From IMG/VR virus record IMGVR_UViG_3300047476_002078, positions 1-64,000 of that record: a DNA stretch of 64,000 nt; one strand, given 5' to 3'. Below the pieces are notes generated by a model. That model was not told where the DNA came from and did not search any database. It saw only the letters and a list, made by a program, of their open reading frames with translations. Numbering within the stretch: position 1 is the stretch's first letter; the number at the start of each line of letters is the position of its first letter. Shown piece by piece: positions 18,985-48,397 of the stretch. The position numbers and the translations under genes were made by a program.

Positions 18985-19024
18985 TCAATTACTTGCGATC
19001 ATTAGTGGATTCGGTATAGCCTTT
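18985..19024 (+). promoter_or_regulatory. Bipartite conserved element, copy 1 (TCAATTACTT-N10-GTGGAWTCGGTATAGCCTTT)
   Basis: Matches 48358..48397 (minus strand) at 10/10 and 19/20 in exact register; ends 11 nt before the helicase ATG. Confidence 0.8.
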
Positions 19025-19035
19025 GAGAGGTTAGA

Positions 19036-21279
19036 ATGAAATCCAACAAAATTGAAAATAAAATTATTGAGACAACTGCTTGGTACGCCAAAACTTTTAA
19101 AGAAAGTCACGGCACTTCCTACGCTTTTAGAAATTTTAAAGTTCTAAAATTTTTAGGGGAAACCTCAAAAGCTTATCATGTTGATGTAGAGTTTTTTTCA
19201 GGTATCTCTTGCACTTGCGGAGTCTGCGGAAGGATTCTATCGAACGCAGTTTCTAAAGCGACTGGAATTGGTCCCGTTTGTGCTGAAAAAATAGGTCTTC
19301 CAAGACCAACACTAGAGTCGGCAAAAGAAACCGTTAAATTAATGGAATCTTTATCACAACAACAAGGTCAATTTACAAGTATTTGGATTCCAAAATCACA
19401 AATTAAAAGAATCGTAGGTGAAGACGGACAAATAATCGAAGGAGACTCTCCTGAATCTGAAAATGATTCAGAAAAAGTAGAAGTTAAATTAGAACATGAG
19501 ATAAAAGTTTCAGGTCAAGAAGTTACTTTCAAATTTAAAGGCGGAGATTTCCAAAATATTTTGAATAAGATGCGTTCAATGAACGGTAAGTGGGATGCTT
19601 CTTCTAAGTCATGGGTAGTATCTCTACAAAATGTAAAAAAAGAATCAAACTCCCTTAAACTTTTAGGATTTAATTTTGATTTAAGCGTGGAAGATGCAGA
19701 AGTCGAAAAGCCTTTGATGCAAATATCCATTGAAGATGATACTGCAATTATCAATTCACCTTATAACTCTCAATTGGTTAATTTTTTCAGAAATAACTCA
19801 GGGTTTATTTATAACGCTTCAAATCACTCAAGAAAGATTAACATTATTTCAGGAGCAGAGACTCTAAAAAAACTTATAGAATTTGCAAAGAATATAGGAT
19901 TTGAAGTTGATGAATCTATAAGCTCTCACCTTGAGGATTTAAAACAAAAGAAAATCGAACTTGAAGCAACAAAAAAAGATTTCACGATTGATCTAAATCT
20001 TGGAATGAAGGTTAAACCATACCCATATCAAATGGCAGGAATTAAGTTCATTGATCTTGCTAACGGCAGAGCAATTGTTGGAGATGAGATGGGTCTTGGA
20101 AAAACTATGCAGGCTTTAGGATGGGTAGCTTGGAGAAAAAAGAAAGCTCTTGTTATTTGTCCTAATTCTTATAAACTCGGTTGGGCTAGAGAGATAACTA
20201 AGTTCACAAATTGCACTAGCCAAGTTTTAGGAAGTAAAAATGTTGAATTTGAGCAATCTGATTTTACGATTATCAACTATGAAAATATTAAAAAACATGA
20301 TTTTTCAAAATTAAATTACGATACAGTTATTATTGATGAATCTCATAAAATTAAAAATTCTAAAACACAAAGATTCGAGTCTTGTGATAAAATTGTATCC
20401 AAATCAAAACATGTAATTTTGCTGACAGGTACAGCGATTGTTAATAGACCTGTTGAATTTTACACACAGCTTAAAATGGTTTCACCTTCATTAGTCGGTT
20501 CTTATGGTTCTTATACTGCTAAATTTTGTGGAGGTCACAATAACGGTTACGGTTGGGATACTAATGGGGCTACGAACTTGGATGAGTTAAGCAAACTTAT
20601 TTCTCCTATCTACCTTCGCAGGATTAAATCAGAAGTTCTTACTGAGTTACCTTCAAAAATTCATCAAGATATAATGATTGAAGGGGTTAAAGTAAAATTA
20701 AATAGACATTCAAAAAACGCTCTTGATGAAATTAATAATCTGAAAATTGAGTTAGCTAAGGAAAAAGTTAGTCATACAATCGAGTTCGTCGAAAACATGG
20801 TTGAGAATGGGGACAAGGTAATTGTTTTCAGTGACTATATTGAGACTGCTAAAAGTATAGCAGATGCTCTTGGAGAAAAAGCTGTATGCTATTTAAGTGA
20901 ACTTTCAACAGAAGAAAGATTCGAGATTGAAAAGAAATTTCAAGAAGATGAAAATGTAAGAGTTTTTGTCGCCACTATGAAAGTCGCAGGGGTAGCACTT
21001 ACTTTAACGGCAGCTAACAAAGTATGTTTTAATGATCTTCCGTGGACTCCGGGCGATTTAAGACAGTGTGAAGATAGAGCACATAGAATCGGTCAAAAAA
21101 ATTCAGTAAATGTTTACAAGATGGTAGCTGAAGGAACGCTGGACGAGTACATTAATGATCTTCTAAACGACAAAATACGTATTCTTGATGCGGTACTTGA
21201 TGGAAAAGAAATTTCGTCTTCTGATAGAGCTATCTTAGATTTATCAATAGAATCAAAGCTTTGTAATATGGTGCGTTAA
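19036..21279 (+). CDS. SNF2-family helicase with N-terminal zinc finger and HARP-like region
   Basis: CGVCGRIL..S.ATGIGPVC; GDEMGLGKT, IIDESH, LLTGT and QCEDRAHRIGQ motifs. Confidence 0.9.
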   Translation: MKSNKIENKIIETTAWYAKTFKESHGTSYAFRNFKVLKFLGETSKAYHVDVEFFSGISCTCGVCGRILSNAVSKATGIGPVCAEKIGLPRPTLESAKETVKLMESLSQQQGQFTSIWIPKSQIKRIVGEDGQIIEGDSPESENDSEKVEVKLEHEIKVSGQEVTFKFKGGDFQNILNKMRSMNGKWDASSKSWVVSLQNVKKESNSLKLLGFNFDLSVEDAEVEKPLMQISIEDDTAIINSPYNSQLVNFFRNNSGFIYNASNHSRKINIISGAETLKKLIEFAKNIGFEVDESISSHLEDLKQKKIELEATKKDFTIDLNLGMKVKPYPYQMAGIKFIDLANGRAIVGDEMGLGKTMQALGWVAWRKKKALVICPNSYKLGWAREITKFTNCTSQVLGSKNVEFEQSDFTIINYENIKKHDFSKLNYDTVIIDESHKIKNSKTQRFESCDKIVSKSKHVILLTGTAIVNRPVEFYTQLKMVSPSLVGSYGSYTAKFCGGHNNGYGWDTNGATNLDELSKLISPIYLRRIKSEVLTELPSKIHQDIMIEGVKVKLNRHSKNALDEINNLKIELAKEKVSHTIEFVENMVENGDKVIVFSDYIETAKSIADALGEKAVCYLSELSTEERFEIEKKFQEDENVRVFVATMKVAGVALTLTAANKVCFNDLPWTPGDLRQCEDRAHRIGQKNSVNVYKMVAEGTLDEYINDLLNDKIRILDAVLDGKEISSSDRAILDLSIESKLCNMVR

Positions 21280-21384
21280 TACTCTAATAAATACATATTA
21301 GTGATCGGTCCATGGGAAGCAAGGAAGCTATTATTTGTATATGAACATATTTGAATTCACCCTTTAACTCTTAGGAGAATTCGT

Positions 21385-21642
21385 ATGGAAGTCATCTTAG
21401 TCGCAATTAAACCTTTAATTGAAACATTTGCAGGGAATAACGGTGTTGTTCTTCAGGTAGTATCAATCATCGGAGCTTTAAGAATTTTATTAAAGCCTGC
21501 CATGACTCTTGCTCAAGCTGTAGTTGATGTTACTCCGTCTCAAACGGATAACGAAAAACTAAACAAGTTTTTAGAAAGCAAGACTTATGCAACAATCGTT
21601 TATGTTTTAGATTGGTTCGGTTCAATTAAATTACGTAAGTAA
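21385..21642 (+). CDS. Small membrane protein (holin-like)
   Basis: 85 aa with hydrophobic segments and a basic C-terminus; RBS AGGAG. Confidence 0.45.
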   Translation: MEVILVAIKPLIETFAGNNGVVLQVVSIIGALRILLKPAMTLAQAVVDVTPSQTDNEKLNKFLESKTYATIVYVLDWFGSIKLRK

Positions 21643-21663
21643 TTGTAAATTCAAAAGGATTTG

Positions 21664-21696
21664 AAAAAGGGGAGTATTTTTTACTCCCCTTTTTTT
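21664..21696 (+). terminator. Rho-independent terminator
   Basis: aaaaaggggagta / tactccccttttt stem followed by a T-run. Confidence 0.85.
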
Positions 21697-21752
21697 ATAC
21701 ATAATCCCTTAATTTTCTACAATATAGGTAAGTTCAATTAAGGAGATTTGAG

Positions 21753-22772
21753 ATGGATTACAAATTTGTAAAAGTGGAAATTGATAAAATGTATAAGCAA
21801 CTCCACAAATACGCTTCATTACCTGCGGAAAATTACCCTCCTGCTAATATAGCAAGTTGGATTAAACAGTGTAAAAAGGCTGGTCGGGATGATTTAGCAG
21901 ATAAAATTATGCAAGGTTGGAATAATTGTGTAGCTAAATATCCTCAAACTAGACTTAGATGGGATACAGCAACAGTTTTAGGGACTAACTCTGTTAAAAA
22001 GAATGTTTTTGGTGGAAAAGATGTAAATTTTGATGAGTGGTTCGCATCTCAAGGAGCACCTCAACAACAAGTACAAGAAGCTAAAAAAATTAAAGAGCCT
22101 AAAATAACTCTTCCTCCTATAGCTACCCCTTCTCCTGAAGAAACCCCTGAACAGTGGCAATCTGAAGCAGCTAAAACTAAAACTATGCTTGACCAAGGTG
22201 AGTCAGCTTTTAAAAATGTTGATGAGTTCATCACTTATTTAAAAAATACGGCGAGCGATCTGCAAAGAAAAATTAGTGATTACGGTCCGGGCGGTTCTAA
22301 AGAAAAAACTAAATCGGGAGCACCTCATAAATTTACAGAAAGGGTTCCAAAGTGGAAATCTGAGTTGGAAACATATTCTGCAAAAATAGAAGAAGTGGAG
22401 AAAAAAACAAAGCAAGCCAAAGAAAAATTTGATGACGCTAAAAAATCTTATGAAAAATCTCCAGCACTTACCGTTAAATATGAACAAAAAGCTCAAGATG
22501 CTTTAGAAGATGTTCTTAACTTTATTTTAAATGTTGAAGATTTTAATAAGCAAAAAGATATGCTGTTAAAGTTCCAAGACACATTAAAAAAGATGGACAG
22601 CAAAAAAGTAGCTTCCTTCGACAAAGAGGCAGCTTTTTGGGATGCCCTTTTTAAAGCTATGACCAACATGTTTGACTATATTTCAAAAGCTTGGAAAAAA
22701 TTAATTGACTGGATAAACGGTCTTTTCAAAGCTATTGATAAATTTGATGAACTTGCAAAAATAGATTTCTAA
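21753..22772 (+). CDS. Hypothetical coiled-coil protein with K-x-A motifs (head-internal candidate)
   Basis: RBS AAGGAG; HKYA at aa 18-21 and DKEAA near the C-terminus. Confidence 0.6.
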   Translation: MDYKFVKVEIDKMYKQLHKYASLPAENYPPANIASWIKQCKKAGRDDLADKIMQGWNNCVAKYPQTRLRWDTATVLGTNSVKKNVFGGKDVNFDEWFASQGAPQQQVQEAKKIKEPKITLPPIATPSPEETPEQWQSEAAKTKTMLDQGESAFKNVDEFITYLKNTASDLQRKISDYGPGGSKEKTKSGAPHKFTERVPKWKSELETYSAKIEEVEKKTKQAKEKFDDAKKSYEKSPALTVKYEQKAQDALEDVLNFILNVEDFNKQKDMLLKFQDTLKKMDSKKVASFDKEAAFWDALFKAMTNMFDYISKAWKKLIDWINGLFKAIDKFDELAKIDF

Positions 22773-22777
22773 ATTAT

Positions 22778-22809
22778 AAGGCGGCAGGTCGTAAAAATCT
22801 GCCGCTTTT
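22778..22809 (+). terminator. Rho-independent terminator
   Basis: gcggcag / ctgccgc stem followed by tttt. Confidence 0.75.
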
Positions 22810-22879
22810 ACCGTAAATTTTACCGTAAAATGAAATTTTATCTATAATCAAAACAACTAACCAAGGACGGAGGTTGTTT

Positions 22880-23635
22880 TTGAGAATAAAATATTTGCTA
22901 TCTAAGTATGATAAAGCTGTTCAAGTTGATAAATCTTTACCAATTCAAAAGCAAACTTTAATAGTATCCCAGCAATTAAAAAGTGTCCGAGACGATTTGT
23001 GCAAAAAGTCTAAAACCTTGAATGATGTCCTCGAAGCACAATACGCTTACATAATATCTTCTTTAAATCATAGAAATAGAATTTGGAAATATGACTACAT
23101 GTCCTTCCCTAGAAGAGTGGGAGAATTATGGGAGTCTTTCTGTAAAGCCGCCTTTTATAATGCACATGATGTAAGACATGTTAATGCCCCTGAATTTAAT
23201 GACATTAAAAAAGAAATAAAAAAATCTATCCCTAAAGAGATATGGCAGATTGTAGGAGAAGTTAATTTAAAAACAGACAGTCTTTTTTATACTGATCGTA
23301 AATTACATGTAATTGACCTTAAATCTAGTTTTAACAGTCATGAAAAAGGTAACATGCAAAGATTAAGGACAGTCGGGGCAGTTTACAAATTATGGAAGCC
23401 TCGCACAAAACTTTTGGTTTTAGTAAGAGAGACAGATAACAGCAATTATTTGGAGCATTTAGAAGAATTTTGGGAAGTAAAATGTGGTAAAGACGCTTAC
23501 AAAACGATTGAAAACTTTACTGGAGTGAATTTACGGAAATGGATTGATCGTAACGTAAATTTTGAAAAACATCTGGATAAAAACTTTTTTATTGACTTAA
23601 AGAAAAATGACCTAGAAAGTTATCTTAACTGGTAA
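22880..23635 (+). CDS. PD-(D/E)xK restriction-endonuclease-like protein
   Basis: GELWE..C, then TDSLF...IDLKSSF (D...D-x-K); GGAGG spacing favours the TTG at 22880. Confidence 0.6.
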   Translation: MRIKYLLSKYDKAVQVDKSLPIQKQTLIVSQQLKSVRDDLCKKSKTLNDVLEAQYAYIISSLNHRNRIWKYDYMSFPRRVGELWESFCKAAFYNAHDVRHVNAPEFNDIKKEIKKSIPKEIWQIVGEVNLKTDSLFYTDRKLHVIDLKSSFNSHEKGNMQRLRTVGAVYKLWKPRTKLLVLVRETDNSNYLEHLEEFWEVKCGKDAYKTIENFTGVNLRKWIDRNVNFEKHLDKNFFIDLKKNDLESYLNW

Positions 23636-23675
23636 AATATAAAATTTTACCGTAAATTTCAAAGGAGTGATTATC

Positions 23676-23972
23676 ATGGCAAAAGAAACCAAAAAGACGG
23701 CAAAAAAACCTAAAACTATGGCAAGCCGTCGAGGAACAGTAACTAAGACAGCTTCAGTTTTTGGGGCTATTGTAAAAACTATTCTTAATACCAAAAAGAA
23801 GACTTTTACATCAACTGAGATTGCTAAAGCCTCTAAAGCCAGCCCACGTCACAGCCGAAGAACTCTAGCTTCTTTAGCTTCTAAAAGCGTTCTAAGAGTG
23901 AAAAAAGGCGAAGCACCATTTGAATACAGTGTTGCCTCTCGTGAAACTCTCAAAAAAATCGTTACTGCTTAA
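23676..23972 (+). CDS. Highly basic winged-helix DNA-binding protein
   Basis: K/R-rich; FTSTEIAKASKASPRHSRRTLASL..VLRVKKG..FEYSV; AGGAG before the ATG at 23676. Confidence 0.65.
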   Translation: MAKETKKTAKKPKTMASRRGTVTKTASVFGAIVKTILNTKKKTFTSTEIAKASKASPRHSRRTLASLASKSVLRVKKGEAPFEYSVASRETLKKIVTA

Positions 23973-24079
23973 ATTAGTCGGGTGTCACATACCTAATCCT
24001 TTGAAATTGTGAGGGTGGCGAGCTATCGCCTCAATTCCTTGATATTTCATAAATTAAATCTCCTTTTGGAGATACAAAA

Positions 24080-26572: not shown

Positions 26573-26593
26573 AGAAAAACTTTTGGATATACA

Positions 26594-27376
26594 ATGAAGC
26601 AGTATCACGATCTATTAAACTTTATCTTAAAAAATGGAAAAGTAAGAGAAGATAGAACAGGAACAGGTACTATAAGTGTTTTTGGATACCAAAATCGTTA
26701 TGATTTGGAAGAAGGTTTTCCTTTAGTCACTACAAAAAAAATTCACCTGAAATCAGTTATCCATGAACTACTTTGGTTCATTAACGGTAACACTAACATT
26801 AAATATCTTAAAGATAACGGCGTTTCGATCTGGGATGAGTGGGCAGATGAGAACGGGAATCTGGGTCCTGTTTATGGTCATCAATGGAGAAATTTTGGAG
26901 GTGTCGTAGATCAGCTTCAAAATGCTATTGATACAATCAAAAACAACCCAAAATCACGTCGAATTATCGTTTCTGCATGGAACCCTGTGGATATACCTCA
27001 GATGGCTTTACCGCCATGCCACGCCTTATTTCAGTTTTATGTTGAAGGTAATGAGTTATCTTGTCAATTATATCAAAGAAGTGCAGATGCTTTTTTAGGA
27101 GTTCCTTTTAATATTGCCTGTTATTCAATGTTGACTATGATGGTAGCTCAAGTAACTAATTTAAAGGCTAAAGAGTTTGTCCATACTTTTGGCGATTTAC
27201 ATATCTATAGTAATCATCTCGATCAAGTAAATTTACAGCTTTCTCGACAACCTAAAAAATTACCTTCACTTGAAATAAACCCAGATGTTAAATCTATTTT
27301 TGATTTTAAATACGAGGATTTTAAACTTATTGGTTATGAACCTGAACCTGCTATAAAAGCACCAGTAGCTATTTAA
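26594..27376 (+). CDS. thyA: Thymidylate synthase
   Basis: [39 protein letters not shown] and HIYSNH motifs; uninterrupted. Confidence 0.97.
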
Positions 27377-27378
27377 TT

Positions 27379-38021: not shown

Positions 38022-39196
38022 TATTTACTGATTATATGAAAAAAACAAACATTTTGTTAAGTTATCTAGTTACGGGTCTTCCAGATGAAGGGAAAACATC
38101 TTTTTCCATAGCTTTAGCCAAAATTTCGGGTGATTACTTTGTTAGTGGGTGTCAGCCTATTTTTAACCCTAAAAGCATAGTAATAATGTTGGATAGATCA
38201 TTTTACTTATTTATAGGAGAAAACCCAGCAACTACAAAATATTCAATAACTACAGCTATTCACAAAGATGCCAAGCTGGACAAAGACGAGTTTCTAAAAG
38301 TAGTAATTAAAGAAATTGATGAAATGTTAGAATACAACCCGAATCAGATCATAATAGAAGGCTACGTTTTAAATTTTATTAAAGAAGAAGTAGAAAATTA
38401 TTTAAAAGATAAAACATTATCTGCTCACATTAGAATGAGAAATTATGTAATACATTATTTGGATGAGGTTTATTCAACTAAGAGGTGCGAAAGTCCGAAT
38501 AGTTATACAGATGAAATAGTTGTAGCTTATAGAGATGCTATTCAATTGTTAAAACAAAAATTAGTTGAAGTTCACGGCAAAAACATTTTATCTCAAGTAA
38601 ATTATCAAGCTTTTCCTGACTTAGGAATAAATGTTAAAAATTCAGACAGCATTAAAAAATTTAAGAGCTTAAATCTAAAAAATTTACAAGACAAAAAAGT
38701 TTTGGACGTTGGGTGTAACCATGGGAGATTTTGCATTGAATCAATTAGGCTAGGTGCTTCCGTAGTTCATGGCATAGATAGTAACAAAAATTTTCTACAT
38801 ACTGCTTCAGCTTTAAATAATATTTTTTATCGCTATAACATTTCTTTTTTTGAATGTGATTTTTTAAATTTTAATCAGTCTAATTATGACATTATTATTG
38901 CTTGTTCCGTGTTTCATTATTTTAAAGAAAATCAACCTGAATTTTTTAAGAAAGCTTATGATTTGTTGGTTAAAGATGGTGTCTTAATTCTTGAAGCAGG
39001 AATATCTGATTTGCATCCAGATAAAGAATTTATTGAAAAGTATCAAAGAGGTGTGGACCCTACACCTTGTCACTTTCCAAATCATTTAGCTTTACTTGCC
39101 ATGGCTCAAGGCTTTAAGTGTGAATATCTAGGTAGTTCCGTTAATCAGCATGGGGATAGAATAAACAGGAAAGTTTATCATTTAAGGAAATTATAA
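38003..39196 (+). CDS. Class I SAM methyltransferase with N-terminal P-loop-like domain
   Basis: VTGLPDEGKTS; KVLDVGCNHG..GID and SVFHY motifs; start may be the ATG at 38036. Confidence 0.78.
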   Translation: MYGNPLIFTDYMKKTNILLSYLVTGLPDEGKTSFSIALAKISGDYFVSGCQPIFNPKSIVIMLDRSFYLFIGENPATTKYSITTAIHKDAKLDKDEFLKVVIKEIDEMLEYNPNQIIIEGYVLNFIKEEVENYLKDKTLSAHIRMRNYVIHYLDEVYSTKRCESPNSYTDEIVVAYRDAIQLLKQKLVEVHGKNILSQVNYQAFPDLGINVKNSDSIKKFKSLNLKNLQDKKVLDVGCNHGRFCIESIRLGASVVHGIDSNKNFLHTASALNNIFYRYNISFFECDFLNFNQSNYDIIIACSVFHYFKENQPEFFKKAYDLLVKDGVLILEAGISDLHPDKEFIEKYQRGVDPTPCHFPNHLALLAMAQGFKCEYLGSSVNQHGDRINRKVYHLRKL

Positions 39197-41187
39197 TGTC
39201 TATTAAAATAGCAAAAATTTTAGCAAAAATAGCTTTAACTTATGAAGAGTATAAAAATCTTCATCCTAAAACTAAAAAAACTCCAGATGATCCACTGTTT
39301 TCAAAAGAAAAAGAAAAAAAGAAAATAAAAAAAGATGTTCCTAATAATACAAAAAATAAAAAGGAAGAATCTAAACAAATTAAAAAGACTACCAAAGAAA
39401 TGTCTGACGACGAAATCGTAGAAAAATATAAGCCTACTTTTTCTGGGGGCGAGTTTCAGAGAAAAATGAATTTTGATGAACTTGGAAAGTATGCGGAAAA
39501 AATGTCTTCAGATGATTTAGCTTACCATCTTGTAAATAGCCCGATACCAGAGGATGAAGGGCATCCGTTTTTTCAATCGGCTAATTATAAGATTGGGAGA
39601 TTTAACGGATTTATGTTACAGCTTTTCAATCCCAACGTGAGCAAAGATGAAAGAACTTCGCTCGCCAGTTACATATTAGATAAAGCTGGAGTTTCTTTTG
39701 TTGGGGGAAGAACTTTAAATCAATTTATAACAGCCTTAGCGAAAAAAGGGTTAATTGATAAAAGTCTTTCTGAAGAATCAGAGTATGATAAATTAAGAAC
39801 TGATCTTTATTATGGAAATATATCTGACTCAGAAGAAATAAGAAAATACGCTAAAGAAAGAGATGGGAAAAGTATGAAGTGGGCGTATCAATTAAAAACT
39901 AATCCGTTCACTCCTTCGGATGTTCTAGTCAAAATTTATCAAGAACATGGTTCAGACTCTTCCTATAAAGAAGTTTTAAGACATAAAAATTTTCCAATAG
40001 AAACACTATTAAAAATAAGACCCCCTACATCTTCTGATAATTATTCTTTTTATTTAGATAGAGAAGATGTACCAAGTCAAATTCAACAACAAATAATTGA
40101 AACTTACATCATGAAGGGTAATGGTTTTTCAATACCTAAAAACTTTAATTTTTCAGAAAAACAACTTTCTGAATTATGGAGAAAAAACCTAGCTTCTCAC
40201 AAAAAATCAAACAAAGAAAAAGCTCAAAAAAGCCAAGACGGATTTATTTACCCTACTGATACAGAGTACGGTCTTTCAAAATGGGCAGAGCATCCAAACT
40301 GTCCCAAAGAGATACTTACAGAAATATTAAATTGGGAAAATAAGCAAGATAGAGAAGGTGGAGTACATTTCTCAATATCAAAAGCAAAAGTTTCTGCTTA
40401 TCAAAACTTAGTTAAAAGAAATATTTTAAAAAAAGAAGATATTGTTAATAAAGTAAAAGAGACTTTAAATTTACACGGTGATGAAGAAATTCTTCAAAAA
40501 TTTGGAGAAAGAGCTTACTGTTCTGAAAATCAAAAAAATGTTGTAAAAAGAACTATTACTAAAGTTTCTCCTGAAGAAAAATTAAAAATACAAGAAGAGA
40601 TGAATAAGACCGCAGTTCACGACGATTTTGATTATGATGTTTTAGAAGTATATGAGATAGATAAAGAGCCTCACAAAGACTTTGAAAATACCGAAAAAAG
40701 AATCAATAATGTTTTTAAAAATGTGTATCATGGTACATCATTTTCAAATGCAGGAGGTATTTTGGCTGACGGTATCAATACTGATTCAAAAGCTAGAACA
40801 GGTCAAATGTTTGGGCAGGGTTTTTATTTAGCTTCAGCCTCTTCAAAAGCAGTTCAATATGCGTCTGATAACTTCTCCAAGAATGAAGGGGAGGGCGTAG
40901 TTTTTCTTTTGGACGCAAGTATGGGAAAAACGACTGAGATGAAATACGGAAGACCTGCTAACGATGATATATCTCGTGTTGAATGGAAAGATGAAATCAA
41001 AAAAAAGAAAGAAGAGTACGAGAAAAATACAGGCAAGACCACTAACACTTATTGGCATTTAGAGCACGATTCAGTTATAGCTAAAGCAGGCATGTCTTTA
41101 GATCACGATGAATATGTGGTTAAGGATTCTTCTCAACTGAGAATAAAAAGAATAGTTCACGTTAAAAAGAAACCAAAAGCAGGCTAA
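39196..41187 (+). CDS. PARP-family (ARTD, H-Y-E) ADP-ribosyltransferase with long N-terminal region
   Basis: VYHGT..NAGGILADG..TGQMFGQGFYLA..SKAVQYA..VFLLDA.MG..HDEYVV; helical NP.TP..L repeats upstream. Confidence 0.9.
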   Translation: MSIKIAKILAKIALTYEEYKNLHPKTKKTPDDPLFSKEKEKKKIKKDVPNNTKNKKEESKQIKKTTKEMSDDEIVEKYKPTFSGGEFQRKMNFDELGKYAEKMSSDDLAYHLVNSPIPEDEGHPFFQSANYKIGRFNGFMLQLFNPNVSKDERTSLASYILDKAGVSFVGGRTLNQFITALAKKGLIDKSLSEESEYDKLRTDLYYGNISDSEEIRKYAKERDGKSMKWAYQLKTNPFTPSDVLVKIYQEHGSDSSYKEVLRHKNFPIETLLKIRPPTSSDNYSFYLDREDVPSQIQQQIIETYIMKGNGFSIPKNFNFSEKQLSELWRKNLASHKKSNKEKAQKSQDGFIYPTDTEYGLSKWAEHPNCPKEILTEILNWENKQDREGGVHFSISKAKVSAYQNLVKRNILKKEDIVNKVKETLNLHGDEEILQKFGERAYCSENQKNVVKRTITKVSPEEKLKIQEEMNKTAVHDDFDYDVLEVYEIDKEPHKDFENTEKRINNVFKNVYHGTSFSNAGGILADGINTDSKARTGQMFGQGFYLASASSKAVQYASDNFSKNEGEGVVFLLDASMGKTTEMKYGRPANDDISRVEWKDEIKKKKEEYEKNTGKTTNTYWHLEHDSVIAKAGMSLDHDEYVVKDSSQLRIKRIVHVKKKPKAG

Positions 41188-42490: not shown

Positions 42491-42499
42491 TGGTGATTA

Positions 42500-42811: not shown

Positions 42812-42878
42812 TCTGAAACTCCTTTTTCATTTTTTATCAATTTAACACTATATTATTATAATCAAAAAGGTTTTAAAT

Positions 42879-43091
42879 ATGTCAGATTTTATTACAGACA
42901 TTCAAAGTATTCAGTATTTGGTTAGTTCTTCAAAAACAGTAGAAGAGGCTAAAAGTTTGTACCATGTTATGCAAGGCATAAATTTGGATAGAACTGTGGC
43001 AGAAAAAGTTTTTGAAGAAATGTTAAGGGCTAAATTTTCTAATAAGAACATTAAAGCTGAAATTTCTAAAATGGAAGCTAAGTTAAGATGA
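42879..43091 (+). CDS. Hypothetical protein
   Basis: 70 aa, RBS AAGG. Confidence 0.55.
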   Translation: MSDFITDIQSIQYLVSSSKTVEEAKSLYHVMQGINLDRTVAEKVFEEMLRAKFSNKNIKAEISKMEAKLR

Positions 43092-43408
43092 AAAGATCAA
43101 AGGTCTGGATTTCATATTGCCCTGATTTAAAAAATATTAACTCAGAGCCTCTGACTGTAAAATTTGAATTTGATTATGATTATGATTGTTATTTCGTAAG
43201 CATATATAAAGAAAGGCTTCTTTTAAAAGAAACTCCAGTTAATAAACAAAGTGATTATTTAGAATTTGAAGAATTAAAAAAAAGCATTAAGGTTGCAGAT
43301 AACCTCATCCAAGAATTACATTACAAAGAAACACTACTTAAAAAATTATTTCGCAAACTGAAAAATAAGTTAAATGATTGGATATACAATCAATGTGGCA
43401 TGAATTAA
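43088..43408 (+). CDS. Hypothetical protein
   Basis: 106 aa, ATGA overlap. Confidence 0.55.
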   Translation: MKRSKVWISYCPDLKNINSEPLTVKFEFDYDYDCYFVSIYKERLLLKETPVNKQSDYLEFEELKKSIKVADNLIQELHYKETLLKKLFRKLKNKLNDWIYNQCGMN

Positions 43409-43418
43409 TTACGGTAAT

Positions 43419-43447
43419 TTGACTTTAAAAACAGCATAAGATATTTT
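43419..43447 (+). promoter_or_regulatory. Sigma70-like promoter
   Basis: TTGACT-17-TATTTT, ending 6 nt before the exonuclease ATG (near-leaderless if real). Confidence 0.5.
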
Positions 43448-43453
43448 AACCAA

Positions 43454-44098
43454 ATGAAAATATCTACAGAATTAATTGTTTTTGATCTCGAATCAACATC
43501 AAATCAAGAAACAAAATACGAAAAGCCTAAAGTTCAAACGAATAATTTCATTATTGAAATAGGTGCTGTTTTACTAAACAAAAATTTAGAAATTGTAGAT
43601 GAGTTTCAGCATTTTGTTAAACCTGAAGAAAATATAACTCCTTTCATAGAAGAATTAACTGGAATTTCAAACGATATAGTTCATAAAGAGCCTACGTGGG
43701 AACAAGTAGCTTCTAAATTTGAACAGTGGGCTTTAAGTCACACTAAAAATTTTAAAAGTGTTAGGTTGTGTGCTTGGGGAAACTATTTTGATATACCTCT
43801 TTTAAGAAAATGCTATTCTCATTACGGTATGTATTACCCTTGGTCAGGAACAGCACTAGATTGTAAAACAATTGCATTTTTATGGTGTGCTTTAAGTGGT
43901 AGAAGAACAGATAAGTTAAGTGTAGAACATTTAGCATCTTTAATGAATATTAGCCCTGAAGGGGATTACCATCGAGCTATAGTGGATGCTCAAGTACAGG
44001 CTAAAATTATCCAAAAGGCTTTAAAAGACCTGTCTTCTGGTTATTTTTTACCTAACACAGAAAACAAGCCCTATGATTTACTTAAAATTTGCAAGTGA
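43454..44098 (+). CDS. DEDDh 3'-5' exonuclease
   Basis: VFDLEST, IIEIGAV, AWGNYFD, ALDCK and HRAIVDA motifs. Confidence 0.9.
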   Translation: MKISTELIVFDLESTSNQETKYEKPKVQTNNFIIEIGAVLLNKNLEIVDEFQHFVKPEENITPFIEELTGISNDIVHKEPTWEQVASKFEQWALSHTKNFKSVRLCAWGNYFDIPLLRKCYSHYGMYYPWSGTALDCKTIAFLWCALSGRRTDKLSVEHLASLMNISPEGDYHRAIVDAQVQAKIIQKALKDLSSGYFLPNTENKPYDLLKICK

Positions 44099-44099
44099 T

Positions 44100-44705
44100 T
44101 TATATTTCACCGTGTAATTCGGTAACTTCCGTTGTGTATGTTTTAAGCCATTTTTTATAAGATTTTTTAATAATTTTAAGTTCCAATTTTGGAGCAATAA
44201 TTTCATCCCAACATTCTTCGTAAACATCATTTAAAAGATAGCACAATGAAAAAGGTCTTTTTGATGTGCTATAAAAATCGTGAGAAAATCCTAATTTGTG
44301 ACCATATTCATGGATAAAATTAGAGCCTGTCATTTTTCTGTGATGGCTTTCTTTTGATAAATTATTTGAATCAAAATATTTTGTGTTCACGTAAATTGTC
44401 ATGGTATTTGGATAGGTATAGCCGATGACATTTTTCCATGAAAAATAAGATTGAATTGTTATATCAATTACGTTGTCGATTGAAGGATTTAGAGTTTCTT
44501 TTCCAGATAGTATGTGGTTGTATATTTGTTCTCTTGATGCGTCTTTCCAAACAGAAAGTTCTCCGATTGGATTTTTAAGATTAATAATTTTTTCTTTAAA
44601 AAGAGAAGAGTTTATTATCATTTCCATCTCTTTCTGTACGGCATTAACTTTTTCCTGTCTTTCCTGTGTGAAATCTATTGTGGTTATATTAATTTTTGTA
44701 TTCAT
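44100..44705 (-). CDS. Zinc metallopeptidase-like protein (metzincin-type motif)
   Basis: HEYGHKLGFSH = HExxHxxGxxH. Confidence 0.7.
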   Translation of the reverse strand: MNTKINITTIDFTQERQEKVNAVQKEMEMIINSSLFKEKIINLKNPIGELSVWKDASREQIYNHILSGKETLNPSIDNVIDITIQSYFSWKNVIGYTYPNTMTIYVNTKYFDSNNLSKESHHRKMTGSNFIHEYGHKLGFSHDFYSTSKRPFSLCYLLNDVYEECWDEIIAPKLELKIIKKSYKKWLKTYTTEVTELHGEI

Positions 44706-44766
44706 TTTAACTCCAAGTTTTACTCAGAATAAAAATAAATATGTTATTTTAACTACATGTGTTAAA

Positions 44767-44796
44767 TTGACAGTTTCACCGTAAAATTGATATTCT
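44767..44796 (+). promoter_or_regulatory. Sigma70-like promoter with CCGTAAA in the spacer
   Basis: TTGACA-18-TATTCT with extended TG. Confidence 0.6.
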
Positions 44797-44802
44797 AAAA
44801 AA

Positions 44803-45153
44803 ATGAACTTTGTTGCTGACTTTTATAATATCATTTCAAAATGCCAGTTTTCTTTAGAATCTGAAGAAGAGTTGAAACTGCAAATTTCAAGCGTCTTAGA
44901 ACGACATAATTTTGATTTTAAAAAAGAGTTTAGATTAGATTCAAAAAATAGGTTAGATTTTTACATTCATGATTATGCAGTAGAGGTAAAAATAAAAGGC
45001 TCTGCTATGAGCATCTACAGACAGTGTGTTCGATATTGTCAATTTAAGGAAGTAAAAGGTTTATTTCTCATTACAAATAAGTCTATGGGGTTTCCCACAG
45101 AGATTAATCAAAAACCTTGTTATTTAATAAATTTAGGTAAAAGTTGGCTTTAA
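44803..45153 (+). CDS. Small PD-(D/E)xK nuclease-like protein
   Basis: E..L, KEFRL..RLDF..AVEVK motifs. Confidence 0.65.
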   Translation: MNFVADFYNIISKCQFSLESEEELKLQISSVLERHNFDFKKEFRLDSKNRLDFYIHDYAVEVKIKGSAMSIYRQCVRYCQFKEVKGLFLITNKSMGFPTEINQKPCYLINLGKSWL

Positions 45154-46814
45154 TGTTTAGATATTACGGTTCTATAAAATTTGATTCTAAAAATAATAGA
45201 TGGACAATAGAACAAATTGAACCGCATGTTTCAATTAAACTAAAATCTATTTTCACAAAAATTGCAAAATGGAAAACCGTTCCAATACATTTTGAAAATA
45301 CTCAAGAAAATTGCAGAGAATTAGAATGGTTTATTTCTCGATACCCTTTAGAAATGAGCGAAGAAGATCACAGTTATTTATTATCGCAAAAATTTAATCA
45401 TCTAAAAAAATTAGAAGATTTAGAAAAAATACTTAAACCTGATTATTCTCCAAGAGTTTTTCCACTGAAAGGTGAACTAAGACCTTATCAAGCTACCGCT
45501 GTTGAAATATTTCTACGCAACAAGCGGTTGTTAATAGGAGATGGAGTAGGATTGGGTAAAACTCTGTGCGGTATAGCTTCTGCTTTAGAGCCTTCTACGC
45601 TTCCAATGGCAGTAGTGGTTCAAACTCATTTACCGACGCAATGGAAAGAGCAGTTTGAAAAGTTTACTGATCTTAAAGTTCATCTAATTAAAGGAACAAA
45701 ACCGTATAATTTACCAACCGCAGATATTTATATTTGGAAATATTCATGTTTGTCTGGATGGGTTGATGTTTTTAAAATGGGATTTTTAAAATCTGTTGTA
45801 TTTGATGAGTGCCAAGAATTACGTATATCTGGTTCACAAAAATATGAAGGAGCGAAAGTTTTAACTTCAAATGTGGACTATGTTCTGGGTCTTTCTGCTA
45901 CCCCTATTTATAATTATGGTGATGAAATTTATAACATAATGAATCTAATCAAAGAAGGCTGTTTAGGAAACATTTATGATTTTATGAGAGAGTGGGCAGG
46001 AGGAGGGAATGGTAAACAAATTAAAAATCCAAAAGCTTTGGGAACTTATTTAAGAGAAAATTTTCTCTTTATTAGAAGAACAAGAGAAGACGTTCAAAGA
46101 GAATTACCTCCAGTAAACAAAATCGTACACACTGTAGATTTCGATAAAGAAGCTGTAGATAATATTGAGGAAATAGCGAAGAAATTGGCTATTTCTGTTA
46201 CGACAGGAACTTTTGTAGAAAGAGGAAAAGCCGCTCGTGAATTAGACATAATGGTTCGTCAGGCTACAGGAGTGAGTAAAGCAAAGTATGTGGCAGAATA
46301 TGTAAAGATTTTGTTAGAAAACGGGGAGTCTGTTCTTTTGGCAGGATGGCATAGAGCCGTTTACGATATATGGTTAAAAGAGTTATTTCAGTACAACCCA
46401 GTTATGTACACTGGTTCGGAAGATGTTAAAGAAAAAGATGCTGCTAAAAAGGCTTTTATTGAAGGTAAATCTCAATTAATGATTATATCACTTCGTTCCG
46501 GAATAGGATTAGATGGTCTTCAAGAGAGGTCTTCTCTGGTAGTTTTTGGGGAATTAGATTATTCTCCAGCCGTTCATGAGCAAGTGATAGGACGCTTAGA
46601 CAGGGATGGTCAAAAAAATCAAGTAACTAGCATTTATTTAATTAGCGATAGCGGCTCAGACCCTTTGATGGTTGACTTATTGGGCTTAAAAGCCTCTCAA
46701 GCCAAAGATATTATTGACCCTATGAATAACCAAGTGACTTTCCAAAATAGTGATGATACTCGTATTAAACTTCTAGCAGAGCTTTACCTTAAAAAAGCAG
46801 GAAATAATGGATAA
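45153..46814 (+). CDS. SNF2-family helicase (second copy)
   Basis: LRPYQ, GDGVGLGKT, VFDECQ, LSATP and QVIGRLDRDGQ motifs; TAATG-coupled to the nuclease. Confidence 0.9.
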   Translation: MFRYYGSIKFDSKNNRWTIEQIEPHVSIKLKSIFTKIAKWKTVPIHFENTQENCRELEWFISRYPLEMSEEDHSYLLSQKFNHLKKLEDLEKILKPDYSPRVFPLKGELRPYQATAVEIFLRNKRLLIGDGVGLGKTLCGIASALEPSTLPMAVVVQTHLPTQWKEQFEKFTDLKVHLIKGTKPYNLPTADIYIWKYSCLSGWVDVFKMGFLKSVVFDECQELRISGSQKYEGAKVLTSNVDYVLGLSATPIYNYGDEIYNIMNLIKEGCLGNIYDFMREWAGGGNGKQIKNPKALGTYLRENFLFIRRTREDVQRELPPVNKIVHTVDFDKEAVDNIEEIAKKLAISVTTGTFVERGKAARELDIMVRQATGVSKAKYVAEYVKILLENGESVLLAGWHRAVYDIWLKELFQYNPVMYTGSEDVKEKDAAKKAFIEGKSQLMIISLRSGIGLDGLQERSSLVVFGELDYSPAVHEQVIGRLDRDGQKNQVTSIYLISDSGSDPLMVDLLGLKASQAKDIIDPMNNQVTFQNSDDTRIKLLAELYLKKAGNNG

Positions 46815-47061
46815 AGAAAAATATGATTTTTTAGTCTCGAAAACTATGGGTGAAATAGAAAAAGCCGTAAAAAATGCTTTGGTTGGTGAAAACTTAACTC
46901 CTTCCGAACAGTTTACTGTTACAACTGGAGTTTCCTTTTTTCTTACGGCTGAACACATTTCCGCTCTCTTGATGAGTCAACCTGAACAAAAAGATTTTTT
47001 AGTTCAGAGTTCAATAAATAAAATTATGGAATTAGTTCAAGGATATTTATCCGAAGTTTAA
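46807..47061 (+). CDS. Hypothetical protein
   Basis: 84 aa. Confidence 0.55.
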   Translation: MDKEKYDFLVSKTMGEIEKAVKNALVGENLTPSEQFTVTTGVSFFLTAEHISALLMSQPEQKDFLVQSSINKIMELVQGYLSEV

Positions 47062-47085
47062 TATTTTAATGGAATGGAGTTTTAA

Positions 47086-47376
47086 ATGAAATTTTTAGTT
47101 GTTATTTTGTCATTTTTTTACGCAAACATTTCTGAGGCTTGTCTTCACAGTGATAAGACTGAGTTTAAACGGAAGCTAGAACAGACAAAGGTTGAGATTA
47201 AAATTTTTTGTCACAACTATTTTAATTCAGATATGATTGAGACTTGCGTTAATGAAAATAATGAATGTTTAAAAGAAAACATTAAAAAAGTTAGAAAAGT
47301 AACTTTTTGCAAAAATGATTCTAATATAATCATTAAAGCTTGGGATATGTGTCAATATAGAAAACCTTGGCTATAA
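47086..47376 (+). CDS. Putative exported Cys-rich protein
   Basis: Signal-peptide-like MKFLVVILSFFYANISEA; RBS GGAG. Confidence 0.6.
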   Translation: MKFLVVILSFFYANISEACLHSDKTEFKRKLEQTKVEIKIFCHNYFNSDMIETCVNENNECLKENIKKVRKVTFCKNDSNIIIKAWDMCQYRKPWL

Positions 47377-48336
47377 ATCCACGCATTGAGAAGCATCCTT
47401 ATCTTCTCTTATTCTTATAAATCTGGGGCTTCTAAAAGCCCCTTTTTTTGTTCTTTCTTGTGCTTTTATCTCAATAACTTTTCCAATGTAACTTTCTTTA
47501 TTTTGTGAGAAATCTCTTCTCATACTTTCACTCATTCCCGAACAAGTTCCAAGCTCAATAATTTGACCGTTTTTATACAGTCCAAATTTTATAGCTCCTA
47601 TTAATTTTTCTTTCCAATAAGATGTTTCAGATACTTCTCCGTTTGATTTTTTTGAAAATTGTTGAGGCTTTTCAAAACCTGTTATGATTACATCCCAAGT
47701 CTTCACTTTTTTTACTTTAAACCAACCTGAGCCGTAACTAGCGTTTAAACTTTTCAACATAATTCCTTCGCCTCCTCTATTTGTTACAGCTTCATATAAT
47801 TTTTTTGCCTCTGAAGCAGGAACAGATTGAACCATAACGACAGGCACTTTATTACTGAATAGAATGTTTACAACTTTTTTTAAAAACTCTTTCCTTTTTT
47901 TAAGAGGTATTTGACGTAAATCATTATTTCCAAATTTAGGTATGTCATAAACATGGTACTCAAGCCAACCTTCTTCATTTTGTTTTTGTACTGCTCTTTC
48001 AGGAGTACACCCCATTATTGAAGTAGTTGCATCGGATTTTTCTGTATTAGGGTGAACTAACTCTCCATCAATAATTGTTCCGTAAAGTTCTTTTGGTACT
48101 AACACTCTTGTTAAGTGGGGACAATGTAGAGTTTTATCTACGTATTCTCCAGTAACGTCTGATATTCTTCGGGATAACAATTTAGATTTCCCAAGTTCGT
48201 CAATATAAAGCAAATAACGGCTTCCGTCTTTTTTCACTTCAGCTACGAAGTTTTCATTGATGAAATTAGAATCTGCCCAAAGATTGTCATAGTCTTCGTG
48301 GGGAATGTGTTCAGCTTTAGCAGGATTTACTTTCAT
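47371..48336 (-). CDS. lig: ATP-dependent DNA ligase
   Basis: EVKKDGSR (KxDG), IDGEL, YDI, GEGIMLK, FKVK and FRSPRF..IREDK motifs. Confidence 0.92.
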   Translation of the reverse strand: MKVNPAKAEHIPHEDYDNLWADSNFINENFVAEVKKDGSRYLLYIDELGKSKLLSRRISDVTGEYVDKTLHCPHLTRVLVPKELYGTIIDGELVHPNTEKSDATTSIMGCTPERAVQKQNEEGWLEYHVYDIPKFGNNDLRQIPLKKRKEFLKKVVNILFSNKVPVVMVQSVPASEAKKLYEAVTNRGGEGIMLKSLNASYGSGWFKVKKVKTWDVIITGFEKPQQFSKKSNGEVSETSYWKEKLIGAIKFGLYKNGQIIELGTCSGMSESMRRDFSQNKESYIGKVIEIKAQERTKKGAFRSPRFIRIREDKDASQCVDL

Positions 48337-48357
48337 GTTTATTCTCCTATAATACTT

Positions 48358-48397
48358 AAAGGCTATACCGATTCCACCGTTTAATATAAGTAATTGA
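48358..48397 (-). promoter_or_regulatory. Bipartite conserved element, copy 2
   Basis: Minus strand reads TCAATTACTT-atattaaacg-GTGGAATCGGTATAGCCTTT, upstream of the ligase RBS. Confidence 0.8.

What the first reader, a model, noticed from the sequence alone, without database searches (positions are those of the whole stretch)
18985..48397. 40-nt bipartite element shared in exact register by the helicase and ligase upstream regions, 29 kb apart and on opposite strands
Seen: TCAATTACTT-gcgatcatta-GTGGATTCGGTATAGCCTTT (18985-19024, +) and TCAATTACTT-atattaaacg-GTGGAATCGGTATAGCCTTT (48397-48358, -). That is 29 of 30 conserved positions around a 10-nt variable spacer, each just before the RBS of a DNA-metabolism gene. 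The GC-rich GTGG..CGG-TATAGC block is not a standard sigma70 promoter. Inference: a phage-specific promoter class (own sigma/RNAP or activator) or a conserved 5' leader.
Basis: partly seen in the sequence, partly recalled or inferred. Interest (0 to 1): 0.7.

Follow-up and report, generated by a model that had tools for sequence, protein, structure and literature searches.

The report
Phage-specific promoter motif, 36 genome copies
The two matching sequences before the helicase and ligase genes are two of 36 near-identical, gene-oriented copies of a 25-base signal in a 356-kb uncultured freshwater jumbo phage. It is most likely this phage's own promoter class, but no matching polymerase or sigma factor was found.

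Summary
In detail: both 40-nt stretches are at the stated coordinates, and chance expects about 0.01 matches.

Only the right half is a general element. The whole genome is a 355,874-bp virus record, 34% GC, and the window is its first 64 kb. The block R-GTGGA(A/T)TCGGTATAGC-M-NN-Y-G-A-R-A occurs 36 times (29 exact 16-mers; reversed-sequence control 0), with no tail of weak sites. In 33 of the 36 copies a Shine-Dalgarno sequence and start codon follow on the same strand, 15-31 nt downstream in 29 of them. The copies lie only in the non-structural part of the genome (19-206 kb) and cluster before tiny orphan genes at 121-155 kb.

Several contexts favour a promoter over an RNA leader: back-to-back divergent pairs, a copy 12 nt after a terminator, and a copy followed only by a hairpin-plus-terminator unit. 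Helicase orthologues at 72% and 68% identity keep drifted variants at the same place.

The left half (TCAATTACTT) is not general. Only TACTT recurs, at -15/-14 in 4 of 36 copies.

No phage RNA polymerase, sigma region 2, sigma-54, MotA or AsiA was detected. The only candidate readers are a tandem sigma-region-4 protein and a NusG-like protein. No start site could be measured.

Verdict: a new variant of a known kind, of moderate interest.

The parts
19004..19028 (+). Core motif copy 1 (positions 0-24): A-GTGGATTCGGTATAGC-C-TT-T-G-A-G-A. G1 = 19005, G15 = 19019, R23 = 19027.
   Evidence: It is identical in the 91%-identity relative, and drifted variants sit at the same place in the 72% and 68% relatives.
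18985..18994 (+). Left block TCAATTACTT, 10 nt upstream of copy 1. Only its TACTT part recurs, in 4 of 36 copies.
   Evidence: ACTT is kept upstream of all five helicase orthologues.
19025..19030 (+). Shine-Dalgarno GAGAGG of the helicase gene. It overlaps the conserved GARA of the motif.
19036..21279 (+). SNF2-family helicase gene (747 aa), driven by copy 1.
   Evidence: Pfam SNF2-rel_dom, Helicase_C and DUF6011.
48354..48378 (-). Core motif copy 2 (positions 0-24): G-GTGGAATCGGTATAGC-C-TT-T-A-A-G-T. G1 = 48377, G15 = 48363.
   Evidence: In a near-identical strain the only change within positions 0-24 is G to A at position 0, which is R in the consensus.
48388..48397 (-). Left block TCAATTACTT, 10 nt upstream of copy 2. 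It lies only about 16 nt from the start of the divergent gene 48413-48751.
48344..48348 (-). Shine-Dalgarno AGGAG of the ligase gene.
47371..48336 (-). ATP-dependent DNA ligase gene (321 aa), driven by copy 2.
   Evidence: Pfam DNA_ligase_A_M and DNA_ligase_OB_2.

Best explanation
The two sequences are members of one discrete class of 36 phage-specific promoters in a 356-kb jumbo phage. Each copy is a contiguous block of about 25 bp, R-GTGGA(A/T)TCGGTATAGC-M-NN-Y-G-A-R-A, with no -35 partner. Transcription would start inside or just after the block, between G15 (after TATA) and the purine at position 23. In most copies this gives a short leader that holds only the Shine-Dalgarno sequence.

The class drives non-structural genes: the helicase, the ligase, an AAA+ ATPase, an amidoligase, dozens of tiny orphan genes and probably a few small RNAs. 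It is therefore most likely an early or middle temporal class.

No phage RNA polymerase is detectable, and the phage carries ADP-ribosyltransferase-like, NusG-like and sigma-region-4-like proteins. I therefore infer that the host polymerase is redirected to these sites by a phage-made specificity factor. With a start at position 23, TATAGC falls at -12 to -7 and GTGGAATCGG replaces the -35 element as a long upstream extension.

What is shown: copy number, orientation, position, discreteness and conservation in relatives. The left block TCAATTACTT is an extra feature of a four-member subclass at most.
For: - **Copy number.** The core 16-mer occurs 29 times exactly and 36 times with up to 2 mismatches; the reversed pattern occurs 0 times.
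- **Discreteness.** The PWM scan gives 36 sites at 16 bits or more. The next best hit, 14.5 bits, lies in a Gly-repeat coding run, and the control gives 0 hits at 10 bits or more.
- **Extent of the block.** Information content is confined to positions 0-24 and is nil upstream.
- **Position.** In 33 of 36 copies a Shine-Dalgarno sequence and start codon follow on the same strand, at 15-31 nt from G15 in 29 of them and at 40-73 nt in four. The other three are followed by no convincing gene.
- **Divergent pairs.** Back-to-back pairs at 148123-148172 and 206233-206278 have only 18 and 14 nt between the copies. That leaves no room for other promoters.
- **Terminator context.** A bidirectional terminator at 139950-139968 ends 12 nt before copy 139981.
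- **Small-RNA-like unit.** Copy 138847(-) is followed only by a 54-nt hairpin-plus-terminator unit with a folding z-score of -3.1.
- **Few host-type promoters.** Sigma-70-like sites are below expectation in the motif-rich 132-152 kb stretch (33 found, 49.5 expected).
- **Conservation in relatives.** Helicase orthologues keep the element in place: identical at 91% identity, GTGGAATCTGTATAAC at 72%, and GTGGAACTGGTATAAC at 68% on a 48% GC contig.
- **Start-site bracket.** In the relative L195 the orthologous start MSY(R/K)FPK, and a glutamine-amidotransferase start MC.., lie at motif positions 21-23 with no Shine-Dalgarno sequence. This brackets the start at position 23 or earlier. Position 23 is a purine in 35 of 36 copies.
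- **No phage polymerase found.** There is no match to PF00940, PF00562 or PF00623. Every DxDxD signature except one is explained by another function or lies in a plain acidic stretch.
- **Transcription-type proteins present.** A tandem sigma-region-4 protein and a NusG/UpxY-like protein, and two PARP-like ADP-ribosyltransferases.
Against: - No transcription start was measured. The only RNA libraries that hold the phage give scattered 151-nt fragments, and two of them span whole copies. That means read-through transcripts or DNA carry-over.
- No cognate reader was identified. The sigma-like protein lacks region 2, and nothing links it to this motif.
- Arrays with a strong promoter before every 300-bp gene and few terminators between them (4 of 36 copies have one upstream) are also what oriented regulator sites or RNA processing sites would look like.
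- The conserved YGARA at positions 20-24 does not fit the usual pyrimidine(-1)/purine(+1) start rule.
- The Pfam search for a T7-like polymerase had no positive control among the 14 control genomes. Extremely divergent phage polymerases escape Pfam (PMC10770324).
Confidence: 0.62

Rival explanations
1. It is an oriented binding site for a phage regulator (operator or 'stoperator'). A monomeric two-domain DNA-binding protein, for instance the tandem sigma-region-4 protein, would bind the asymmetric 16-25 bp site in front of many genes. It would block, or license, host polymerase arriving from promoters elsewhere.
For: The sites are asymmetric, highly conserved, strictly co-oriented with transcription, set in short intergenic spaces and number in the tens per genome. 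Those are the properties described for mycobacteriophage L5-type stoperators, which a monomeric two-domain repressor binds (PMC9283540). A two-HTH protein of 210 aa exists at 188546-189178. The two conserved sub-blocks, GTGGAAT and GGTATAGC, are about one helical turn apart.
Against: The divergent pairs and the terminator-adjacent copy leave no room for separate promoters. Sigma-70-like promoters are below expectation in the array. Stoperators belong to the immunity systems of temperate phages and occur across both genome arms, whereas these sites are absent from the whole structural half. One copy is followed only by a small hairpin-plus-terminator unit.
Confidence: 0.14
2. It acts as RNA, or in the transcription bubble, as a conserved 5' leader element. 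Options are a processing or stability site that cuts long transcripts into units beginning just before each Shine-Dalgarno sequence, a translation signal like mycobacteriophage start-associated sequences, or an ops-like loading site for the phage NusG paralogue.
For: The copies sit at a nearly fixed short distance before the Shine-Dalgarno sequence and start codon. There are dense arrays, one per small gene, with few terminators. Two RNA-library fragments span whole copies. A NusG/UpxY-like gene is present. From my own knowledge, the RfaH ops element GGCGGTAG shares CGGTA with the motif. Start-associated sequences are an oriented 13-mer before many starts (PMC3203893).
Against: The motif has no evident hairpin of its own, though this was judged by eye and not folded. 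No Rfam family matches in 114-170 kb. In divergent pairs the leader would have to be transcribed from inside the opposing gene. A terminator directly upstream of copy 139981 would stop any transcript that should carry it. Three copies are followed by no gene. Unlike start-associated sequences, the motif is separate from the Shine-Dalgarno sequence, and its distance to the start varies by 16 nt.
Confidence: 0.12
3. It is a promoter for an unrecognised phage-encoded RNA polymerase. The architecture would be T7-like: a contiguous block from -15 to +10, starting at the G after TATA. The enzyme would be a very divergent single-subunit or two-barrel polymerase hidden among the large unannotated proteins.
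For: The block is contiguous, has very high information content and forms a discrete set of sites, as with T7, T3 and SP6 promoters. ..GGTATA|G.. resembles T7-type ..CACTATA|G (my own knowledge). Variants are lineage-specific in relatives. Several proteins of 1000-1250 aa have no family match. Extremely divergent phage polymerases are known to escape profile searches (PMC10770324).
Against: There is no PF00940, Rpb1 or Rpb2 match. No T7-type motif A, B or C patterns and no NADFDGD-like motif turned up. The DxDxD scan leaves only a poor candidate, DKDSD in the 1168-aa ORF. Starts without a Shine-Dalgarno sequence at positions 21-23 in the relative fit a start near 21-23 better than one at 15. 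Proteins that typically act on the host polymerase are present.
Confidence: 0.1
4. It is a host sigma-54 (-24/-12) promoter class. TGG at positions 2-4 and GC at 15-16 have exactly the GG-N10-GC spacing of sigma-54 promoters.
For: Eight of 12 consensus positions match, including both invariant doublets, at the right spacing (read; the consensus is from my own knowledge).
Against: The start would fall near position 28. That is after or inside the Shine-Dalgarno sequence of at least six copies, including the helicase, and after the start codon in the relative L195. There is no Sigma54_DBD in the phage, and only a generic AAA hit for the activator domain. No bacterial genome in the collection carries multiple copies.
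Confidence: 0.02

Closest known systems
T7/T3/SP6-type promoters of single-subunit phage RNA polymerases
   Same: A contiguous block of about 23 bp with very high information content. A small discrete set of near-identical copies per genome. TATA immediately before a G. Lineage-specific sequence variants among related phages.
   Different: No T7-like polymerase gene was found. Copies occur on both strands, including back-to-back pairs. Starts without a Shine-Dalgarno sequence in a relative suggest initiation about 6-8 nt further downstream than a T7-like reading predicts.
Phage promoter classes read by a redirected host polymerase without a -35 element (T4 late TATAAATA with gp55/gp33; T4 middle MotA box with AsiA; Thermus phage P23-45 extended -10 promoters)
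   Same: There is no -35 element. With a start at position 23, a TA-rich hexamer (TATAGC, TAnnnC across relatives) falls at -12 to -7. The class covers a temporal group of genes. The phage carries proteins that plausibly act on the host polymerase.
   Different: The conserved block is far longer (17 contiguous bases plus YGARA). It ends in C, not T, at -7. No gp55-like or region-2 sigma, MotA or AsiA was found.
Stoperators of cluster A mycobacteriophages (L5 gp71 type)
   Same: Asymmetric sites numbering in the tens, in short intergenic spaces, with orientation tied to the direction of transcription. They are read by a monomer with two DNA-binding domains (PMC9283540).
   Different: Stoperators are 13 bp, part of lysogenic immunity, and spread over the whole genome. 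These sites are 17-25 bp, limited to the non-structural half, and stand where a promoter is needed.
Start-associated sequences (SAS) of cluster K mycobacteriophages
   Same: An oriented, conserved, non-palindromic motif before the starts of many non-structural genes, absent from host genomes (PMC3203893).
   Different: SAS lies 3-7 bp from the start codon and contains the ribosome-binding site. This motif lies upstream of a separate Shine-Dalgarno sequence at a variable distance, and it also occurs without a downstream gene.

Membership tests
T7-like single-subunit RNAP promoter | A cognate T7-like RNA polymerase gene is present in the same genome. | tested here: not met
   The six-frame PF00940 search found no match (no control genome could ring, so sensitivity is unverified). 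No motif A/B/C patterns occur in ORFs of 250 aa or more.
T7-like single-subunit RNAP promoter | A contiguous conserved block of about 20-23 bp spanning the start site, in near-identical copies. | tested here: met
   Positions 0-24 are conserved, with 36 discrete copies.
T7-like single-subunit RNAP promoter | Transcription starts at the G following TATA. | not testable with these tools
   No usable 5'-end data. The sequence bracket is positions 15-23.
Sigma-70 (housekeeping) promoter | A -35 TTGACA-like and a -10 TATAAT-like hexamer 16-18 bp apart, with T at -7. | tested here: not met
   No conservation upstream of position 0. The hexamer is TATAGC, with C at the last position in 34 of 36 copies and in all relatives.
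Phage-encoded sigma-dependent promoter class | A phage gene for a sigma factor with the promoter-melting region 2. | tested here: not met
   PF04542 gave none at E <= 0.1. TIGR02937 hits cover region 4 only. In the 210-aa family, 50 of 51 members have region 4 and none has region 2.
Sigma-54 (-24/-12) promoter | GG and GC doublets 10 bp apart. | tested here: met
   G3G4 and G15C16.
Sigma-54 (-24/-12) promoter | A start about 12 nt after GC that is compatible with the downstream gene, plus a sigma-54 or enhancer-binding protein. | tested here: not met
   A start near position 28 falls after the Shine-Dalgarno sequence or start codon in several copies. There is no Sigma54_DBD, and only a generic AAA hit.
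T4 middle promoters (MotA/AsiA) | MotA and AsiA homologues, a MotA box at -30, and a sigma-70 -10 element. | tested here: not met
   PF09114 and PF09010 gave no match. The conserved block abuts the TA-rich hexamer rather than lying at -30.
Stoperator-type regulator sites | Asymmetric sites in short intergenic spaces, with orientation tied to transcription. | tested here: met
   All 33 copies with a downstream gene are co-oriented with it.
Stoperator-type regulator sites | A cognate repressor binds the site and stops elongation; promoters lie elsewhere. | not testable with these tools
   The protein-DNA job was not folded. The context argues that promoters are needed at the sites themselves.
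Start-associated sequences (SAS) | The motif occupies the ribosome-binding-site position, 3-7 bp from the start codon. | tested here: not met
   The motif ends 13-29 nt before the start in 29 copies, with a separate GGAGG-type site between them.
Known RNA families (Rfam) | A match to a curated covariance model. | tested here: not met
   No match at E <= 0.1 in 114-170 kb, which holds 26 copies.

The most novel reading that the evidence does not exclude
The motif would be read by a so far undescribed specificity system. One option is the widespread, roughly 200-aa tandem sigma-region-4 protein family, possibly with the adjacent NusG paralogue, steering host RNA polymerase to a long -35-less promoter without any sigma region 2 of its own. 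The other is a polymerase too divergent for all current profiles. Either would be a new way for jumbo phages to reprogram transcription.
Probability: 0.2. Interest if true: 0.7.

Novelty: new variant of a known kind. Interest (0 to 1): 0.42.

Why it matters
Phage-specific promoter classes are how large phages time their gene expression. Past examples gave molecular biology some of its most used tools, and new ways of redirecting RNA polymerase.

Here an uncultured 356-kb freshwater phage has a sharply defined 36-member class and no recognisable cognate polymerase or sigma factor. The motif therefore gives three things:
- a ready-made regulon map (helicase, ligase, AAA+ ATPase, amidoligase, about 25 orphan genes and likely small RNAs);
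- a marker for this phage lineage, since variants track relatives.

If it is only an ordinary middle-promoter class, it is still a useful annotation, but not a surprise.

Tried and rejected
- **RNA evidence.** Two run searches and both read-laying runs found one 'RNA-Seq' run that is probably DNA, and two lake metatranscriptomes with only scattered low-depth fragments. No start-site information came out.
- **Relatives by exact motif in IMG/VR**. These gave only single chance hits, or a Gly-Gly-Thr-Gly-Ile-Thr coding repeat of tail fibres.
- **The 16-mer in 596 Gb of bacterial genomes**. Only single scattered hits, so there is no host regulon or prophage.
- **Megablast and tblastn against cultured phages**. 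No close relative. The nearest tail sheath is Tunturiibacter phage Tunturi_5 at 36%, and its paper says nothing on transcription.
- **More distant relatives.** LR745208 (485 kb) and a contig with a 59%-identity ligase lack the motif.
- **Metagenome scan with the ligase**. Only two near-identical fragments.
- **Polymerase hunt.** Pfam and PHROGs on the largest ORFs, one ESM Atlas query and regex signatures. The attractive DFDID hit is a glycosyltransferase, and DFDFD is ribonucleotide reductase.
- **Rfam** on the motif-rich region: nothing.
- **PeSL-like 'terminator plus promoter' cassettes.** Rejected as a general model, because only 4 of 36 copies have an upstream terminator-like hairpin.
- **ECF-type two-block reading** (GGAAT ... 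YGARA). Rejected because the spacer would be only about 10-12 nt.
- **Protein-DNA complex prediction** of the tandem sigma-4 protein with the motif. The job was not folded and gives no evidence either way.
- **Fold search** of that protein. It returns only sigma region 4 domains.

Full report
**Observation**

Both stretches are present as described. TCAATTACTT, a 10-nt spacer and GTGGA(T/A)TCGGTATAGCCTTT lie at 18985-19024 (+) and 48397-48358 (-). Each is followed by a Shine-Dalgarno sequence and an ATG. The downstream genes are an SNF2-type helicase (19036-21279) and an ATP-dependent DNA ligase (47371-48336, minus strand) by Pfam. Dinucleotide-preserving shuffles expect 0.01 and 0.00 matches.

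**What the genome is**

The window is the first 64 kb of a 355,874-bp virus record at 34% GC. The record has an 87-bp terminal overlap. It is the JGI contig Ga0485304_000001. Near-identical DNA is held by freshwater, lake and wastewater metagenomes.

No cultured phage is close. The nearest tail sheath is that of the 309-kb Tunturiibacter phage Tunturi_5 at 36% identity.

The left 207 kb carries nucleotide and DNA metabolism genes, sugar-modification genes and hundreds of tiny orphan genes. A packaging block (large terminase, portal) lies at 192-201 kb. The tail sheath and baseplate genes found lie at 322-339 kb.

**The right half is a genome-wide element**

GTGGAWTCGGTATAGC occurs 29 times exactly and 36 times with up to 2 mismatches. 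The reversed pattern occurs 0 times.

Aligning the 36 copies shows conservation over positions 0-24: R-GTGGA(A/T)TCGGTATAGC-M-NN-Y-G-A-R-A. Upstream, from -39 to -1, there is none.

A PWM scan is sharply bimodal. It gives 36 sites at 16 bits or more. The next hit, 14.5 bits, is a Gly-repeat coding run. The control sequence gives nothing at 10 bits or more. The window holds only the two reported copies.

All copies lie between 19 and 206 kb, and 26 of them lie at 116-166 kb. That region is slightly GC-richer (0.37-0.40 against 0.32) and consists of 60-130-codon orphan genes. None lies beyond 207 kb, in the half that holds the sheath and baseplate genes.

**Anatomy**

In 33 of the 36 copies a GGAGG-type ribosome-binding site and a start codon follow on the same strand. 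The start lies 15-31 nt from G15 in 29 of them and 40-73 nt in four. The remaining three copies (138847, 139981, 140667) are followed by no convincing gene.

Packing is tight. Four upstream ORFs end on the TAG inside TATAGC, and three end on TA plus G1.

Known functions among the driven genes are the helicase, the ligase, an AAA+ ATPase (148680-149825), an amidoligase (206306-207244) and an LpoB-like protein. The rest have no family match.

**Promoter or RNA/regulator site?**

Four contexts argue for initiation at the element itself:
- Two back-to-back divergent pairs (148123-148172 and 206233-206278) have only 18 and 14 nt between the copies.
- A bidirectional intrinsic terminator at 139950-139968 ends 12 nt before copy 139981.
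- Copy 138847(-) is followed by no ORF, only by a 54-nt unit of a small hairpin plus a terminator (z = -3.1). Copies 139981 and 140667 are followed by paralogous non-coding spacers of about 85 nt and then another copy.
- Sigma-70-like sites are fewer than expected in 132-152 kb (33 against 49.5). Only 15 good intergenic ones exist in the whole genome.

Against this, no start site could be measured. One 'RNA-Seq' run looks like DNA. Two lake metatranscriptomes give only scattered 151-nt fragments, two of which span whole copies.

**Relatives**

Helicase orthologues were found at 91%, 72% and 68% identity. All keep the element at the same place:
- identical at 91% identity;
- GTGGAATCTGTATAAC at 72%;
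- GTGGAACTGGTATAAC at 68%, on a 48% GC contig.

A second contig from the same sample as the 68% relative (L195, 51% GC) shows a looser GTGGAA-N3-GTA-N3-C before many genes, again including a divergent pair and a terminator-then-motif arrangement.

In L195 the orthologue of the 151857 gene (MSY(R/K)FPK) starts at motif position 21 with no ribosome-binding site. An Ntn-type amidotransferase (MC..) starts at position 23.

Together with the requirement that every Shine-Dalgarno sequence be transcribed, this brackets the start between positions 15 and 23. A start at the purine of position 23 (35 of 36 copies) would put TATAGC, which is TAnnnC across relatives, at exactly -12 to -7.

More distant relatives lack the motif. 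So do IMG/VR and 596 Gb of bacterial genomes, apart from single chance hits.

**The left half**

TCAATTACTT is not part of the general element. However, TACTT occurs at -15 or -14 in four copies (19005, 48377, 98569, 165222), where 0.06 would be expected at one fixed offset. ACTT is also kept upstream of all five helicase orthologues. There is therefore a small subclass with an extra upstream feature of unknown role. In the ligase copy it also lies about 16 nt from the start of the divergent gene 48413-48751.

**Who reads it?**

Six-frame profile searches of the genome found none of the following:
- a T7-like polymerase, Rpb1 or Rpb2 domains, or sigma-70 region 2;
- a sigma-54 DNA-binding domain;
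- MotA or AsiA.

Signature scans gave no credible polymerase, although very divergent phage polymerases can escape such searches (PMC10770324).

The only transcription-type genes seen sit together at 186.5-189.2 kb:
- a clamp loader;
- a NusG/UpxY-like protein (187868-188539);
- a 210-aa protein with two sigma-region-4 helix-turn-helix modules and no region 2 (188546-189178).

That 210-aa protein belongs to a family of about 525 clusters of roughly 200-aa proteins. Fifty of 51 sampled members show region 4 and none shows region 2. The model is confident (pLDDT 87.7) and matches only sigma region 4 domains in the PDB.

Two PARP-like ADP-ribosyltransferases (39196-41187 and 86873-89050) recall the T4 enzymes that modify host polymerase; that comparison is from my own knowledge.

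**Comparison with known systems**

The element works most like a phage-specific promoter class.
- It shares the contiguous, discrete, lineage-variable design of T7-type promoters, but fails the cognate-polymerase test.
- It shares the -35-less design and a -12 to -7 TA-rich hexamer with the T4 late and Thermus-phage extended -10 classes. It is much longer than those, ends in C, and has no gp55-, MotA- or AsiA-like partner.
- The GG-N10-GC spacing of sigma-54 promoters is met, but the implied start is incompatible with the downstream genes.
- Stoperators (PMC9283540) and start-associated sequences (PMC3203893) share its number, asymmetry and orientation. They differ in position, context and biology.

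**Verdict**

It is not a 40-nt bipartite signal of replication genes. I rate it a new variant of a known kind.

Noticed in passing
window 22808-22828 (tandem), 23647, 43409, 56895; genome-wide 45 copies: A second over-represented motif, the palindrome TTTAC(C/G)GTAAA. It lies mostly 20-90 nt upstream of starts with no orientation bias, and often directly after a TTGAC(T) or before a TATAAT. It looks like the operator of a dimeric regulator, or a -35-region element of another promoter class. Two copies sit just upstream of the GTGGATTCGG copy at 77690.
   Followed up: partly
genome 138778-138847 (-), i.e. L013:6778-6847: One motif copy is followed by no ORF. Instead there is a 54-nt unit with a small hairpin and a strong intrinsic terminator (z = -3.1). 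This is a candidate phage small RNA.
   Followed up: partly
genome 139981-140099 and 140667-140773 (L013:7981-8099, 8667-8773): Two paralogous non-coding spacers of about 85 nt (..GCGAAAGGGMAACGC..GACTCTACCATGGTAGGGGGAGG..), each bracketed by two motif copies. There is no Rfam match and no strong fold.
   Followed up: partly
genome 186475-189178 (L189:787-2097; L016:475-1893): A cluster of a clamp loader, a NusG/UpxY-like antiterminator (223 aa) and a 210-aa protein with two sigma-70 region-4 modules but no region 2. The last belongs to a family of about 525 metagenomic clusters. The cluster lies about 3 kb upstream of the terminase gene.
   Followed up: yes
window 39196-41187 (+) and genome 86873-89050 (+): Two large proteins with PARP-type ADP-ribosyltransferase domains. 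They are possible modifiers of host proteins, such as RNA polymerase.
   Followed up: no
genome 192265-194982 (+): The large terminase gene carries Hint and LAGLIDADG domains, so it probably holds an intein.
   Followed up: no
window 9750-18575: A module with a CHAP peptidase, a RelA/SpoT-like enzyme, a DegT-type aminotransferase fused to other domains, several glycosyltransferases, a dTDP-sugar isomerase, thymidylate kinase and an Fe-S assembly protein. It may serve sugar or DNA modification. Thymidylate synthase is at 26594-27376.
   Followed up: no
window 56522-56597 (-); genome 70709-70896, 72171-72245, 95300-95376: Five tRNA genes: Gly-tcc (in the window), Leu-taa, Met-cat, Gln-ttg and Arg-tct.
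   Followed up: no
genome 94201, 122405, 133778, 138833: Four upstream ORFs end on the TAG inside the motif's TATAGC. Three others end on TA plus the motif's first G. So the signal overlaps coding ends.
   Followed up: partly
genome 347836-355874: The last 6 kb reach 52% GC, against 33% elsewhere. They encode Gly-X-Y (collagen-like) repeat proteins.
   Followed up: no
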